In this document: positions 2,002-11,000 of the stretch, in pieces
How positions within the stretch are numbered: position 1 is the stretch's first letter
Layout of the letters: every line of letters starts with the position of its first letter
Assembly: GCA_965644265.1 (NCBI GenBank)
Contig: OZ286466.1
Coordinates: 9,114,001-9,178,000, forward strand
Source: Glycera tridactyla
Lineage: Eukaryota
Reading direction: 5' to 3'
DNA: 64,000 nt
The notes under the pieces: generated by a model
The model's database searches: none
Told to the model about the DNA's origin: nothing
What the model saw: the letters and a program-made list of their open reading frames with translations, nothing else
Position numbers and translations under genes: made by a program

Positions 2002-5000
2002 GTGAGTCATTCATGCTGAAAAATCCTGACTTCGAGGTTAATGGGTGTATAGAAGGGATGGTACAGAGAATTACAAAATACTCCCAGTGGGAGATGAAAT
2101 CTTGTTGGGGAGATTCAAAGCAGTAAGACTAGCCATGAATGAGAACCTTCAAGATTTGAATTGAATTGGATTGAATTCAATAGAATTTTACTATCAGTGG
2201 GGAGTTCCGAAGGACATTTTCCCCTCATCGAGTACAAAAATCTAATACAAGTATGTACAGTTCAAGACATATGCATATCAATAATAACGTAAAAATACAT
2301 AACAAGAGTATAAAACATATGAAATGACGATAGAACTGGAATCTCATGAGTCATCGTACATTGGTGCATGATTACATTACTCTCGAACTGGGTTTATGAA
2401 CAAATACGTCATCTATCCACCCCATCACGTAGTTGTTATTTTTAGTTCTGCTGTATTTTTCAATTGAACTGGTGTATCATCAAGCCATGCCGTGTCTGTA
2501 CGTACTTCAGTCTTGTTGATATATGAGGTATACTATGGATACTTTTCCAGACATTGATGACTGTTCGAATGGCCCATGTGTCAACGGAGCTACCTGTATT
2601 GACAACATCACCAACTACACCTGTGTATGCGCTGCCGGTTTTACAGGCCGTCACTGTGACATAGGTGAGTCTGATATCAGGATCAGCACTAGAACCATCC
2701 TAATAGGGTAATGTAAGAGAGTATCAAAATGCCAAAGCTTAATATCCTGGCACCGTTGTTCATCCCCTTGACACTTTGAGCCCAAAGTATGTGCGCCACC
2801 GTCCTATCCAAATAGTCAAACTCTTTACATCCTTCACAAGCTCCCTTGGAACCGTTAAAAATTCTGCTAGGACATGGAATAGAATTCAACATACGTGTCC
2901 GAGGAAGACATCACATATCAGTGATTTGAACAGTCTTCCCTTTGGTCAATTTCCCCAACACTACATTACTGTTGAAAGAGATAAAAATGCCATTGTTCTA
3001 AAGTCTTTTCTAAACCTTTCTTACTTCAGGAATTAATAATTGTGCTGACAGTCCATGCGGACAGCATGGTGATTGTATCGATGAAGACAATGGATACTTC
3101 TGTGATTGCTTTGTGGGATACACTGGGTATAATTGTGAGACAGGTAGGTGCCATCGTAAATATCATTGCATGTCATATACAGTGACTCGGCTGTGTTCGA
3201 CTGGGGCACCGATGAAATGAGTAATTACACATGTACCCAGGATACTGTTGTCATCCCAGTAGATGAAATGCATAATTGATGCAAAAATAAGAAAATAAAG
3301 TCTCCTCTAAGAGTTATCTAATTATATGAAAAGTCCTGACACTGTACAAACTATCACAATCAGTCGTCACCCTCTTTGATCGGCAATCAAGTTGATGAAA
3401 GTCAGCTGATAGATTTCAATATCGGACCACAGGCCCAGTTCATTGACTGGTCTGCTGATTCTTCTAACTGTATTTCCAATTGCTTTCCTGAACTGATTAC
3501 TGACTTTGATTACTAATTGATTCAGCTTCTATTTATCATTTCTGTTATGATTCTTCTATTTGAATTGGTTTGGAAGTTCTCATTGACACATGACATGAAT
3601 TATTCGCTGTTGCTAAGGAAGTCACTCAGCTTTCTGTGGAGCACAGATTACTGAACAGACTGGATGAATGAATTGAGTGGACAATTTTGCATTACCTTCC
3701 AGACATCGATGACTGCCAGTTCAACAACTGTCAGAATGGTGCAACCTGTATGGATCACGTGGGTTATTACAGATGTGAATGTATGCCTGGCTTCACTGCT
3801 TTTGATTGTGATCGAGGTAAGACATAATATAGAGATTACGAAACTGTGATGGCGAGCAGGCAAGCTTGATCCAGATATATGAGGCAACCTGGAAAGTAAC
3901 ATATTTCATCCTTGTGAAACCATGACGACTATGATTACCAAAATAACAAATATCGTGAATAAACATTTTCATATTTCGTATCAAATCATGACCCCCCCCC
4001 CTCTGAGCTGAGGTATCTTCGATTTGTATTCTGAGATTCATCTGATTTCACACACATTCCTCACTCTATTACTTCAGTGTGACTCACCAATATTGGTCCT
4101 ATTTTCAGATATTGATGAGTGTAATGACGAGGGCACCTATTACTATGATGACTATTCTGGTGTAGCTGCTTGTGTGGAGGATCCGAATGCCATCTGTACT
4201 AACACCATCGGTAGTTACATCTGCTCCTGCCAACAAGGATACCAATATGACACCATCGCTGAATTATGTACAGGTGAGGATTCTGCTATTCATTGGAAAA
4301 TAATAGAGGTAGTCTTTGATTTGGGGGAAAAAATGGAAGTGAATGACCAACACCTGAACTAAGGTGTTCAAGGTGGATAAAGTTACTCCAAGATATCAAC
4401 GAGTGCCAGTACGATGATGTTGATGATGCAATAGATGGCATTTCTCCCTATATGGCCCTGAAATGGTAGTCTCTTTCTTCTCTAAATGTACATGAAAATG
4501 TAGTTATTTACAGTGTCATATAACAATCTGATTCGAAATTACATTCCATGCCAGGCGATGTTTGCACATATTCATTTTTGGGGGGGGGGGGGGGGAACGT
4601 TTATACACACAAGGCGGACTTGCATGATTGGGTATCAGAGTAAATGTCTGTACCCCCCCACTTGCCTAGGGTTAGAAAAGGCAATGGATGGGTACTTCTT
4701 GCACCTAACCCTTGTAGGCTGTAAAGGTGCAGGTCCATCACCGATTGGTCAACCTTGTCAATCTTGGTCATCCATCTGAGTTGGTGCACTCCTCATCAGT
4801 AAAAAATACATTGCTCAGCGGAGCCCAACTTGCCTTACCCCGTATAACAACTGACAAATCTATAGGGTATTCCTCATAATATTTTTGTGGAGTGTTCCTT
4901 GGTACTTCCTCTTAGTACTCAACGACACATAAACGCTCAGTTTGTTTGGACTCAGTTTGTTCGATATTCTGAATGGTAAGCGGATGAAAGTCTGCCTGAT

Positions 5001-8000: not shown

Positions 8001-11000
8001 GGTGGAACCTGTATAGATGATGTCAATGGATATTGGTGCCAGTGTCCTGCAGGATATCGTGGGCTGCACTGCGATGAAGGTTAGTTTTCCACCATTAGTT
8101 TTTTTCATTCTTGCCAAGGTAATGAATTCCAAGGTAATACGGGAGGCAAACTAGGGGATGTATATTGCGATATATCCGTGAAGAACTTCACTGTACATCG
8201 TAATGAAAAGGGAGGAGAGTTGGAATATTCGCATCTGTCTCAATATAGTCCTGAAAAGATAATCTCTCTCTCCTATGAGATATATTCGTGTAAATGCAGC
8301 AGTTGACAGTCTGGTATAGAAATCTGCCTCGAAGTAACAAGGCTGTCATTTTTCACAACAGCTAAATGTTGATTTCGTTTCTAAATAAAGATATTGAATC
8401 AGTCAATCCACCTGAGTTGGTAAACTCTTCATCATTACAATATGTAGTAGTCTGGAGACCAGAATGCCTAACACGCTTCACTCTGGAGAATTACTGGCAG
8501 ATTTTTACTGTATACGATACAACACACGGACCCTTGGTTCATATGGATTTTTCTGATGATCTTCAACTTATGCCCTGATTGTTGTTGGGTGTAGATGTGG
8601 ATGAATGCAGCCATGATGTTGATGTAGAAGGATGGAGGCCAGCATCCTGTCTCTATGACCACCACGCCATCTGTACAAACACCATTGGGAGTTACATCTG
8701 CTCCTGTCAACCTGGTTTCTTCTTTGATGACTCGCTCAACATTTGCAGAGGTACGTTTAGGTGATCTTCATATCAAATATCATGAGCATCAATCTGATAT
8801 GAGTGACGTTTGTGGGGAAAGAGCGTTAATCATTTACATGAGATACTAAACCCATCAAATAATTTGAGACGTTGCATCCCAATATATCGACAACATACAT
8901 CTCGTCTATCTCTTGCTCTTACACAACTGATCTTTTCATCCATTGAACATATCCAAGTTCTGGCACTGATATATGGTGACATCCATTATACTTTGTTGGG
9001 ATCAACCATGCCTCTCAAACTGAGACTGAAATAGAAAAAAAAAAAGGAAATAGGAGTTGTCAAATCTGACCTAGACCAATCACCCTATGTGAACCATTCT
9101 GCAAAATGTTACGTATGGGATCAATTCTCGAACGAATACATCATTTCGAACAAAAAAACGAGGAAATCTCTATGATTTCAGCCATTCAATTACGATAAAA
9201 CCAACTGTTTGTCACTATGCTATTCATCTCATTGATATCTAGGTGCTTTTGTACGCATCATATCTTCATAATGATGAGATATATGTTGATTCTTGGTAAA
9301 TATGGATGAACTCATGATGAATTGTACTTTTTTCAGATTCTTCATATTTGCCGTGCTGTGAGTATACAAAGTATTTTCTCTTTCACACTCACACACACAG
9401 GCACAGACACAGACACAGACACACACACACACACACACACACACACACACACACACATGCATGGATACATATACATATACATATACACACTATAAGAGCT
9501 ATAAAGTATTGCAGGAAGAATGACATATCAAACAGAGTTTATCCGATGAAGATATCTCGATCCTAGACCCGAAGCAGCATACCCAATATGATCCAATCTA
9601 TAGGTGATCGTAATATCCCATATCATTCATTAGGCTTATCAGATAATATTGTGATATGAGATATTGACCACTGACTAAACTGTTACTGACTGATAGGAAT
9701 TTGAGGACAAGAGATATGACTGTCATCACACAATTTTCGAGAACATCACGATTTTATCTAGATCTCCACACATCATGTCGATGGCTCAGCGCAATTCTAG
9801 GCTAACTCCCTTCTTTGTCCATAGTGAGTTAACCTAGTATTGCGCTGAGCCATCGATGTGGTGTATATGATATAATATATTGTGTATATAATATAATATA
9901 TATAATGATGATGCTCAATAATGATATTCGTTTCTACTGTTCAAAGTTTCAAGTCTACAATAATGTGACTCTCTTGAGAACATGACATTAAAACAAACAT
10001 TTTCAGTATCATGCTTTGGAGTATATAATTGAAAGAAATCGCCCTGAAAGATAACCCAGAATAGAATGGACATATTGATTTCATTTTCAGGGAATGCCAC
10101 CAATGGCGGGAATGCAGACAACGCTCCTTGCGTATTCCCATTTCAGTACAAGGGACAAGAATACAACGACTGCACAACCAAGGACCACAACCGACCATGG
10201 TGCTACACAGCCACAGCAAGAAAGTGGGGTGAATGCATCTGTGAGTAGAATGTCTTATCCTTAGTCTCCTTGGAAAAATATTGTTTTGGATTTCACTCAT
10301 TTCAAATTCATAATCACCAAATATCACTGATCTACTGAGATTAATTACGGTTTGATTCTTCCAATCACCTTTCTCTCTCACCATTGAAATAAATATTGGG
10401 TATATCCAAGGAAAAACGTGTAAACTTTTTTTCTTCAGAATTTCAGAGGTATTTTCAACATTGAATTTATAATGCTCGAAGATATCAACCCTTATTCACA
10501 ATAACTTCAGGGAGGGCTACTCCACAAATACGTGTATGATCAAATTTCTTGACAGTATTTACCATAACTTGGAAAACAGGCTCATCAGTAGAGTGCTCTT
10601 CCTGGACCTCAAAAAGGCATTTGACACTGTGGATCATGACTTATCAGTTCAGAAACTGACCATCCTCGGCTTTAGTAAAACATGCAGCAAGTGGATCAGG
10701 TCATATTTGTCAAACCGCTACCAGGTCACAGTTGTAAACGTTACCTCCTCAGACCGGGAATTGATTCGATGTGGAGTACCAGAGGGGTCAATTCTCGGTC
10801 CTCTCCTTTTCACTTTGTACATCAATGACTTGCCAGAACACCTTGTTATTGTGAAACCAGCTTGTATGCTGACGACACTGCTATGTTAGTGTCGGGTATG
10901 GATGCAGTTGAAGTTGAAAACAAGTTGCAGACTAGTCTCAGTTCAGTATCAGAGTGGCTATCGTCAAACAAATTAACATTGAATGCCAGAAAAACTAATC

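What the first reader, a model, noticed from the sequence alone, without database searches (positions are those of the whole stretch)
4109..8750. Four EGF types carry long acidic/Tyr-rich loops between Cys1 and Cys2, possibly display loops
Seen: exons E, F, I/E' and K have 16, 21, 15 and 13 residues between C1 and C2 ([16 protein letters not shown]; [21 protein letters not shown]; [15 protein letters not shown]; [13 protein letters not shown]) against 4 in the short EGFs. They share a NT.GSY.C.C..G(Y/F) core and are interspersed with Notch-type 38-aa EGFs. In exon F the loop start varies most between units ([36 protein letters not shown]) while the core barely changes. Knowledge: Tyr flanked by Asp/Glu is the usual TPST sulfation context, and Tyr-rich EGF proteins such as mussel foot protein 2 are DOPA-modified adhesives. 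Inference: the EGF fold scaffolds a variable, anionic, modifiable loop for binding, adhesion or mineral interaction.
Basis: partly seen in the sequence, partly recalled or inferred. Interest (0 to 1): 0.72.

Follow-up and report, generated by a model that had tools for sequence, protein, structure and literature searches.

The report
EGF domains with long acidic loops
Four exon types in a giant, very acidic matrix-protein gene of a probable worm encode ordinary calcium-binding EGF domains whose first loop carries 7-15 extra acidic, partly tyrosine-rich residues. The insert is real, inherited and mostly flexible, but nothing yet shows that it is sulfated, adhesive or used for binding.

Summary
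Exons E, F, I and K have 16, 21, 15 and 13 residues between Cys1 and Cys2, against 4 in the neighbouring Notch-type EGFs. All 16 copies in the window are intact phase 1-1 exons with AG/GT sites.

They are canonical calcium-binding EGFs of the fibrillin/C1r/CD97 kind. They pass the Pfam EGF_CA and EGF_3 thresholds and carry DIDEC and the Asn-hydroxylation motif. The extra residues sit in the middle of the first loop.

The four loops are homologous to each other: a D-x-[DE]-G motif and an invariant Ala two residues before Cys2. Length is fixed within each type.

Amino-acid change in the loops is near neutral (N:S 23.5:7.5, against 22.5:35.5 in the cores). Its rate per codon matches that of the short EGFs, so the loops are relaxed rather than hypervariable.

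AlphaFold2 leaves the F loop unmodelled (pLDDT below 50). The K loop is modelled with moderate confidence.

Such loops are rare: 1.6% of 2,171 cbEGFs surveyed, with only one acidic/Tyr-rich example.

Sulfation context is fair, not canonical. K has no Tyr. The DOPA/mussel analogy fits poorly.

No RNA runs were listed, and no orthologue was reachable. Other notes of this scan describe the same window's super-repeat, but none describes long-loop EGFs on other DNA.

Verdict: a modest new variant of a known domain.

The parts
4109..4273 (+). Exon E (unit 1): calcium-binding EGF. The C1-C2 loop of 16 aa is at 4123-4170. The second copy is at 20162-20326.
   Evidence: Pfam EGF_CA 33.2 bits and EGF_3 33.8 bits, both above gathering score.
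5383..5562 (+). Exon F (unit 1): calcium-binding EGF. The C1-C2 loop of 21 aa is at 5397-5459. Other copies are at 21431-21610, 35227-35406 and 50265-50444. The last two start the loop with RGD.
   Evidence: Pfam EGF_CA 34.9 bits. AF2 loop pLDDT below 50.
7472..7633 (+). Exon I (unit 1): calcium-binding EGF. The C1-C2 loop of 15 aa is at 7486-7530. Other copies are at 23389-23550, 36988-37149 and 59839-60000. I-like E' copies occupy the E slot of units 3 and 4 at 34957-35118 and 49995-50156.
   Evidence: Pfam EGF_3 39.8 bits and EGF_CA 27.2 bits.
8595..8750 (+). Exon K (unit 1): calcium-binding EGF. The C1-C2 loop of 13 aa is at 8609-8647 and holds no Tyr. Other copies are at 24653-24808, 38437-38592 and 61201-61356.
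   Evidence: Pfam EGF_3 32.1 bits and EGF_CA 29.7 bits. AF2 mean pLDDT 82, loop about 73. Aligns end to end with the C1r EGF module 1apq.
6084..6197 (+). Exon G: short Notch-type EGF with 4 aa between C1 and C2, standing between the long-loop exons. H (6882-6995) and J (7966-8079) are likewise short.
4392..5118 (+). Decayed E'/I-type long-loop exon inside the E-F intron, split into halves at 4392-4457 and 5038-5118. It has lost Cys residues and holds a stop. The same relic in unit 2 is at 20444-20509 and 21092-21172.
   Evidence: tblastn of the exon peptides against the window.
10129..15131 (+). Three fibronectin type II exons that follow exon K in unit 1 (10129-10236, 13654-13776, 15000-15131). 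They belong to the same super-repeat.
   Evidence: Pfam fn2 at 44.9, 50.1 and 48.0 bits.
1888..63276 (+). Extent in this window of the gene that carries the loops. There are four tandem units of about 14 kb: U1 partial to 16 kb, U2 17201-24808, U3 31659-38592 and U4 45014-61356. Each complete unit (U2-U4) has 12 single-EGF exons; partial U1 shows 11. Both ends of the gene lie outside the window.
   Evidence: Self-BLAST. Exon table with splice sites.

Best explanation
Shown.
- Exons E, F, I (with its E' variant) and K encode calcium-binding EGF domains of the fibrillin/C1r/CD97 class.
- In them, 7-15 residues have been inserted into the middle of the first (Cys1-Cys2) loop.
- The four types descend from one ancestral long-loop cbEGF by exon duplication.
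- The gene encodes a giant, secreted-type, very acidic matrix protein. It is built of at least four super-repeats, each with 12 EGF, 3 FN2 and a Cys-rich module.
- The domain cores are under purifying selection.

Inferred.
- The end of the loop (G-A-x-x-x-A-Y-Cys2) does the packing job of a normal short loop.
- The acidic middle (D/E/Y/N-rich, with YYY in E and F) hangs free beside the inter-domain calcium site.
- This would give the calcium-stiffened rod a negatively charged, flexible flap at four positions per repeat.

Most likely role, not shown. The flaps form an anionic contact surface for cations or for basic or collagenous partners. This would act together with the collagen-binding-type FN2 modules. 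Tyrosine O-sulfation of the E and F loops is a plausible reinforcement.
For: Domain identity:
- Pfam EGF_CA and EGF_3 score above gathering thresholds for all four types.
- DIDEC and the motif C-x-N-x4-Y-x-C-x-C are present in 16 of 16 copies.
- The nearest solved relatives are CD97/EMR2, NELL1/2, fibrillin-1, Notch1 and C1r.
- The best fold matches are the C1s/C1r, fibrillin-1 and NELL EGFs.

Real exons: all have AG/GT sites, phase 1-1 and no stops. Core pN/pS is 0.16.

Common descent of the loops: alignment A1 shows a shared D-x-[DE]-G and an invariant Ala at Cys2-2. E and F still align at DNA level, 77.6% over 272 nt.

Fixed length within each type: 2-6 copies, no indels.

Relaxed middle, conserved end.

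Flexibility: the AF2 F loop has pLDDT below 50 while the core has 72-77.

Rarity:
- 34 of 2,171 cbEGFs in 150 large EGF proteins have 13 or more residues there. Only one of these is acidic and Tyr-rich.
- None of 250 cbEGFs in 39 loci sharing the same core motif has 10 or more.

Context: three fn2 exons per unit. Composition is 15% D+E against 1.8% K+R.

Precedent: sulfotyrosine within acidic arrays is documented in collagen-binding matrix proteins such as fibromodulin and lysyl oxidase (PMC9372746, PMC7310474).
Against: - No RNA or protein evidence: no sequencing run was listed.
- No orthologue was found, so conservation beyond this gene is unknown.
- The loop substitution pattern equals the neutral expectation, so most of the insert may have no sequence-specific job.
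- The K loop lacks Tyr and is modelled with moderate confidence, so one explanation may not fit all four.
- Few loop Tyr have D/E at -1, and most are within 7 residues of a Cys.
- The D/Y/N/H richness partly reflects one codon family, NAY: 40% of loop codons against 26-27% elsewhere, p=0.03. A mutational origin could account for this.
Confidence: 0.5

Rival explanations
1. Tolerated insertion without a specific job. The first loop of an EGF domain accepts extra residues. A slippage-type expansion of NAY codons was fixed once and copied by exon duplication. It now drifts, and its acidity simply mirrors the rest of the protein.
For: - Loop N:S is 23.5:7.5, about the 3:1 expected without constraint. 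Loop pN/pS is 0.82.
- NAY codons are enriched, 40% against 26-27%.
- The whole protein is acidic.
- The AF2 F loop is unstructured.
- A long-loop exon has been allowed to decay in units 1 and 2.
Against: - There are no length changes within any type across 16 copies, although introns differ by about 10% with many indels.
- The distal half of each loop and the D-x-[DE]-G motif are conserved across types whose cores are only 44-69% identical.
- All cEGF-class domains of the gene kept the insert.
- The last 13 F-loop codons are identical in three units.
Confidence: 0.28
2. The loops form a second, low-affinity calcium site next to the canonical cbEGF site. They would do so through motifs that resemble thrombospondin type-3 or EF-hand calcium loops.
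For: - The I loop reads D-D-A-D-G-A-I-D-G, which is D-x-D-G-x-x-D.
- The K loop reads D-V-D-V-E-G, which is D-x-D-x-[DE]-G.
- Paralogue changes at these positions are D/N or D/E swaps.
- The K loop is modelled with moderate confidence.
Against: - There is no Pfam TSP_3 or EF-hand hit at E<=0.1.
- The F and E loops fit the motif poorly.
- The comparison was made by eye against consensus recalled from memory.
- AF2 cannot place ions.
Confidence: 0.12
3. DOPA-bearing adhesive like mussel foot protein 2. On this reading the loop tyrosines are oxidised to DOPA for adhesion or cross-linking.
For: The protein is a tandem EGF array with Tyr clusters. Annelid tube cements use DOPA (my knowledge).
Against: - DOPA adhesives are basic and Lys/Gly-rich (my knowledge). 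This protein has 1.8% K+R and 15% D+E.
- The K loop has no Tyr.
- No tyrosinase or gland context is available.
- mfp-2 EGFs are not known to me to carry long C1-C2 loops.
Confidence: 0.04
4. Cell-adhesion loops. The F loops of units 3 and 4 present an RGD tripeptide on a flexible loop for integrin binding, as EGF-borne RGD does in MFG-E8, Del-1 or fibulin-5.
For: C-RGD-Y/F-D-S-Y sits at the start of the F loop in two units (35241-35249 and 50279-50287). Arg is rare in this protein. The loop is predicted flexible.
Against: - Units 3 and 4 are recent duplicates, so this is a single evolutionary event.
- Units 1 and 2 have QKH or QQH instead.
- The RGD abuts the disulfide Cys1.
- The tripeptide was picked out after the fact.
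Confidence: 0.06

Closest known systems
Calcium-binding EGF domains of fibrillin-1, LTBP, CD97/EMR2 and NELL1/2 (Pfam EGF_CA PF07645, EGF_3 PF12947)
   Same: D-I-D-E-C start, Asn-hydroxylation motif, the C3-C4 hairpin NT.GSY.C.C..GY, a 12-residue C5-C6 segment, and tandem arrays with one-residue linkers.
   Different: Those domains have 4-8 residues between Cys1 and Cys2, with a mode of 6 in 2,171 surveyed. These have 13-21. E, F and I exceed the x(3,14) allowed by the PROSITE EGF_CA pattern as I recall it.
EGF module of complement C1r (PDB 1apq), and the C1s/MASP EGFs
   Same: A cbEGF with an enlarged first loop. Exon K (residues 1-51) aligns end to end with 1apq residues 3-50. C1s/C1r EGFs are the top fold matches over 51-52 columns. 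From memory (Bersch et al. 1998), the C1r loop is about 14 residues and disordered in solution.
   Different: C1r has a single EGF between CUB domains, and its loop is neither Tyr-rich nor repeated. Here loops reach 21 residues and recur four times per super-repeat.
Sulfotyrosine-rich acidic extensions of class II/III SLRPs (fibromodulin, osteoadherin, lumican) and of lysyl oxidase
   Same: Clusters of Tyr among Asp/Glu in flexible segments of matrix proteins that bind collagen or act as heparin mimics (PMC7310474, PMC9372746).
   Different: Those are N- or C-terminal tails of vertebrate proteins with sulfation shown by experiment. Here the segment is an internal loop closed by a disulfide, in an invertebrate, with no experimental data. 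Few of its Tyr have an acidic residue at -1.
Mussel foot protein 2 (tandem EGF, DOPA)
   Same: Tandem EGF repeats containing Tyr.
   Different: mfp-2 is basic and carries DOPA, and no long C1-C2 inserts are known to me. This protein is strongly acidic. There is no sequence-level link.

Membership tests
Calcium-binding EGF domain (Pfam PF07645; PROSITE EGF_CA) | Profile score above the curated threshold | tested here: met
   EGF_CA scores are 33.2 (E), 34.9 (F), 27.2 (I) and 29.7 (K) bits against a cut-off of 27. EGF_3 scores are 32-40 bits against 28.5.
Calcium-binding EGF domain (Pfam PF07645; PROSITE EGF_CA) | Six Cys in EGF order, with the N-terminal D/N-x-D/N-E/Q-C calcium ligands | tested here: met
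   D-[IVT]-[DN]-E-C and six Cys are present in all 16 copies.
Calcium-binding EGF domain (Pfam PF07645; PROSITE EGF_CA) | Asp/Asn beta-hydroxylation consensus C-x-[DN]-x4-[FY]-x-C-x-C | tested here: met
   16 of 16 copies match the regular expression. The modification itself cannot be tested here.
Calcium-binding EGF domain (Pfam PF07645; PROSITE EGF_CA) | Cys1-Cys2 spacing within the pattern's x(3,14) (pattern recalled from memory) | tested here: inconclusive
   K (13 aa) fits. I (15), E (16) and F (21) exceed the range. This is a limit of the pattern, not of the fold.
Tyrosylprotein sulfotransferase substrates | Tyr in an exposed, flexible segment of a secretory protein, with several acidic and few basic residues within 5 positions | tested here: met
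   Most loop Tyr in E, F and I have 3-5 acidic and 0-1 basic residues within +/-5. The F loop has pLDDT below 50. No signal peptide lies in the window, so secretion is inferred from the domain types.
Tyrosylprotein sulfotransferase substrates | Acidic residue at position -1, and no disulfide Cys within about 7 residues (classical rules, from memory) | tested here: not met
   Only 2-3 loop Tyr have D at -1. Most have a Cys within 7 residues. K has no Tyr.
Tyrosylprotein sulfotransferase substrates | Sulfate on Tyr demonstrated | not testable with these tools
   This needs mass spectrometry or 35S labelling.
Mussel foot protein 2-type DOPA adhesive | Basic, Lys/Tyr-rich tandem EGF protein of an adhesive gland, with DOPA | tested here: not met
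   K+R is 1.8% and D+E is 15%. Tissue and DOPA are not testable here.
DxDxDG-type calcium loops (EF-hand, thrombospondin type 3) | Asp/Asn at loop positions 1, 3 and 5, Gly at 6, and an acidic residue at 9 or 12 | tested here: inconclusive
   K has D-x-D-x-E-G and I has D-x-D-G-x-x-D. F and E fit poorly. No Pfam hit to TSP_3 or EF-hand appears.

The most novel reading that the evidence does not exclude
The long loops are sulfated on their Tyr clusters. Spaced along a calcium-stiffened EGF rod that also carries three collagen-binding-type FN2 modules per repeat, they would form a protein-encoded, glycosaminoglycan-like polyanionic stripe. That stripe would organise the worm's giant collagens or bind basic ligands. 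The variable loop start (including RGD in two units) would give each repeat its own specificity. This would be the first sulfotyrosine display loop built into an EGF domain.
Probability: 0.12. Interest if true: 0.6.

Novelty: new variant of a known kind. Interest (0 to 1): 0.3.

Why it matters
If the loops are modified or bind partners, they would show that the first loop of a cbEGF can serve as an insertion site for a flexible anionic flap on a rigid rod. That design principle is not described for EGF arrays. It would also give a concrete invertebrate target for sulfotyrosine proteomics. As it stands, the finding mainly documents a rare but unsurprising length variant of a very common domain, inside one of many giant repeat genes of this genome.

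Tried and rejected
- RNA evidence. The look-up of sequencing runs listed no run, so read laying could not be used.
- Orthologues, full library. The HMMER search of 1.84 billion representatives with exon F gave 2,302 hits. The 150 shown are large EGF arrays matched on the core only. Local BLAST of every exon type against them gave at best 35-69% identity per exon and no shared architecture.
- Orthologues, word search. The word search with exon F is limited to proteins of 33-105 aa and gave one weak hit. Its contig is an unrelated SRCR-EGF gene.
- Longer queries. A search with the spliced unit of about 525 aa, and an AlphaFold run of an E-F pair, were left out. A spliced product has no reference, and I did not type it.
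- Literature. Searches for cbEGF insertions, for the C1r loop and for annelid EGF-FN2 proteins gave nothing specific.
- Positive selection on the F-loop start was considered and rejected. The count is 12 nonsynonymous to 2 synonymous events, not distinguishable from neutrality.
- The LDLa label for the module at 16377-16493 is not backed by Pfam.
- Assembly gaps (25462-25704, 46055-46226, 46807-46938) were left untouched.
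Full report
**Anatomy**

The window is eukaryotic DNA, about 40% GC, carrying one gene on the + strand. Self-BLAST shows four tandem units of about 14 kb, with introns roughly 90% identical between neighbouring units.

A six-frame scan found 47 EGF-like exons, all on the + strand. Every one has an AG acceptor behind a pyrimidine tract, a GT donor, phase 1-1 and no stop.

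Each complete unit has 12 single-EGF exons. Eight are short (114 nt: A, B, C, D, D2, G, H, J). Four are long:
- E, or an I-like E' in units 3 and 4
- F
- I
- K

After K come three exons that score as fibronectin type II (Pfam fn2, 45-50 bits). There is also a six-Cys module that resembles LDLa but gets no Pfam hit. Both ends of the gene lie outside the window.

A DIRS-type element interrupts unit 4 at about 51.1-58.9 kb.

**Observation check**

| Exon | Coordinates | C1-C2 loop |
|---|---|---|
| E | 4109-4273 | 16 aa |
| F | 5383-5562 | 21 aa |
| I | 7472-7633 | 15 aa |
| K | 8595-8750 | 13 aa |

- Cys spacings are [13-21, 7, 8, 1, 12] in the long exons and [4, 5, 8, 1, 8] in the short ones.
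- The four quoted F-loop starts are those of units 1-4.
- The loops hold 26% D+E and 15% Tyr, against 15% and 5.9% in the rest.
- The whole protein is very acidic (K+R 1.8%).
- K has no Tyr and I has two.

**Domain identity**

All four long types pass Pfam's thresholds for EGF_CA and EGF_3. All 16 copies carry D-x-D/N-E-C and the Asn-hydroxylation consensus.

The nearest solved relatives by sequence are CD97/ADGRE5, EMR2, NELL1/2, fibrillin-1, Notch1 and C1r. The AlphaFold model of K finds the C1s/C1r, fibrillin-1, NELL and CD97 EGFs as best fold matches. Their E-values are weak, as expected for 52 residues.

So these are ordinary cbEGFs of the long-C5-C6 (cEGF) class. They are interleaved with Notch-type (hEGF) domains, several of which carry O-fucose and O-glucose consensus sites.

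**The insert**

Alignment A1 of the 16 long EGFs shows that the loops are homologous to each other, not four independent inventions.
- A D-x-[DE]-G motif lines up in the I and K loops; F and E fit it only loosely. The residue two before Cys2 is an invariant Ala.
- Loop ends such as GVAA-C and MSAY-C look like a normal short loop.
- The extra 7-15 residues therefore sit in the middle.
- E and F still align at DNA level, flanks included (77.6%).

Within each type, loop length never changes across 2-6 copies. Exon turnover occurs. Units 1 and 2 carry a decayed E'/I-type exon, split by about 570 bp, inside the E-F intron. Units 3 and 4 keep that exon and lack E.

**Evolution among the paralogous copies**

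| Measure | Loops | Long-EGF cores | Short EGFs |
|---|---|---|---|
| Pairwise Nei-Gojobori pN/pS | 0.82 | 0.16 | 0.29 |
| Event count N:S (spanning tree per codon) | 23.5:7.5 | 22.5:35.5 | 99.5:86.5 |
| Nonsynonymous events per codon | 0.36 | 0.15 | 0.34 |

- The loop-against-core difference is significant (Fisher p=0.0009).
- The loop ratio is what neutrality predicts, about 3:1.
- The loop rate per codon matches the short EGFs.
- What stands out is therefore the strong conservation of the long-EGF cores, not hypervariability of the loops.

In F, all change sits in the first 8-9 residues. One position holds Y, P, H or N in the four copies. The last 13 codons are nucleotide-identical in three units. 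Twelve nonsynonymous against two synonymous events cannot be told from neutrality.

NAY codons (D, Y, N, H) make up 40% of loop codons against 26-27% elsewhere (p=0.03). Part of the composition could therefore be mutational in origin.

**Structure**

- AlphaFold2 on exon F, with the 16 paralogues as alignment, gives a core pLDDT of 72-77. It leaves loop residues 6-24 below 50.
- Exon K, with 40 sequences, reaches a mean pLDDT of 82, with the loop at about 73.
- The long loops are thus predicted unpacked and flexible, while the shortest may be semi-ordered.
- From general knowledge of cbEGF pairs, the first loop emerges beside the N-terminal calcium site at the domain junction. A long insert would therefore project sideways from the rod.
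- An E-F pair could not be folded, because a spliced product has no reference.

**How unusual**

- In the 150 best proteins of a full HMMER search of 1.84 billion representatives, 2,171 cbEGFs have a modal first loop of 6 residues.
- Of these, 34 (1.6%) have 13 or more, mostly rich in N-glycosylation sites.
- Only one is acidic and Tyr-rich (P0034, LEYEGSGDEYEGSSDA).
- In 39 metagenome loci that share the core motif, all 250 cbEGFs have 4-8 residues there.
- A precedent for an enlarged, disordered first loop is the C1r EGF module. That is my memory of Bersch et al. 1998. It fits the end-to-end alignment of exon K with 1apq.
- Long first loops are therefore known but rare. This acidic, Tyr-bearing kind, present in every cEGF-class domain of the gene, has no described counterpart that I could find.

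**Modification and function**

- Most Tyr in the E, F and I loops have 3-5 acidic and at most one basic residue within five positions.
- Only two or three have Asp at -1, and most lie within seven residues of a disulfide Cys. The context is fair rather than canonical.
- Sulfotyrosine clusters in acidic tracts are documented in collagen-binding matrix proteins such as fibromodulin and lysyl oxidase, where they mimic heparin (PMC9372746, PMC7310474).
- The three FN2 modules per repeat make a collagen-associated role plausible. Earlier notes of this scan report giant collagens and many giant FN2 genes in this probably annelid genome (not tested here).
- The I and K loops also resemble D-x-D-G-x-x-D and D-x-D-x-E-G calcium loops. 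This was judged by eye only.
- The F loops of units 3 and 4 begin with RGD.
- The DOPA-adhesive analogy fits poorly, because this protein is acidic rather than basic.

**What could not be done**

- No sequencing run was listed, so expression and splicing are unverified.
- No orthologue was reachable. The word search only sees proteins of similar length to a single exon.
- Assembly gaps were left as they are.

**Verdict**

The display-loop idea is compatible with the data, but so is a largely neutral insertion. This is a new variant of a known domain, of modest interest until RNA, proteomic or binding data exist.

Noticed in passing
window 4392-4457 + 5038-5118; 20444-20509 + 21092-21172: A decayed long-loop (E'/I-type) EGF exon lies in the E-F intron of units 1 and 2, split by about 570 bp, with lost Cys and a stop. 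Units 3 and 4 keep it intact (34957-35118, 49995-50156) and lack exon E. The ancestral unit may therefore have had 13 EGFs.
   Followed up: partly
window 35241-35249 and 50279-50287: The F loop of units 3 and 4 starts with an RGD tripeptide directly after Cys1. Units 1 and 2 have QKH or QQH there.
   Followed up: partly
window 5397-5459 and the F copies at 21445-21507, 35241-35303, 50279-50341: Inside the F loop, one codon holds four different residues in four copies (TAC, CCC, CAC, AAC). The last 13 codons are nucleotide-identical in units 1, 3 and 4, although the exon cores show synonymous differences.
   Followed up: partly
window 10129-10236, 13654-13776, 15000-15131 (and copies in units 2-4): There are three fibronectin type II exons per super-repeat (Pfam fn2, 45-50 bits). 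Together with earlier notes of many giant FN2 genes in this genome, this points to a large FN2 expansion.
   Followed up: partly
window 16377-16493, 30834-30950, 44477-44683: A six-Cys module before exon A looks like LDL-receptor class A (C..F.C...C...CDG..DC....SEDE.C). It gets no Pfam hit at E<=0.01, and its C3-C4 spacing is too short.
   Followed up: partly
window 10473-12221: A LINE-type reverse-transcriptase fragment carries a 99.6% identical tandem duplication of about 511 bp (11192-11710 and 11703-12221). It sits in the intron after the first FN2 exon of unit 1 and is absent from the other units.
   Followed up: no
window 9230-9560, 39100-39445, 62000-62220: (GT/CA)n microsatellites occur at the same intron position after exon K in several units.
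   Followed up: no
window 1888-2664: Exons B and C of unit 1 differ much more from their counterparts in units 2-4 than later exons do (pS 0.41-0.48). The first part of unit 1 therefore belongs to a different, older unit type.
   Followed up: no
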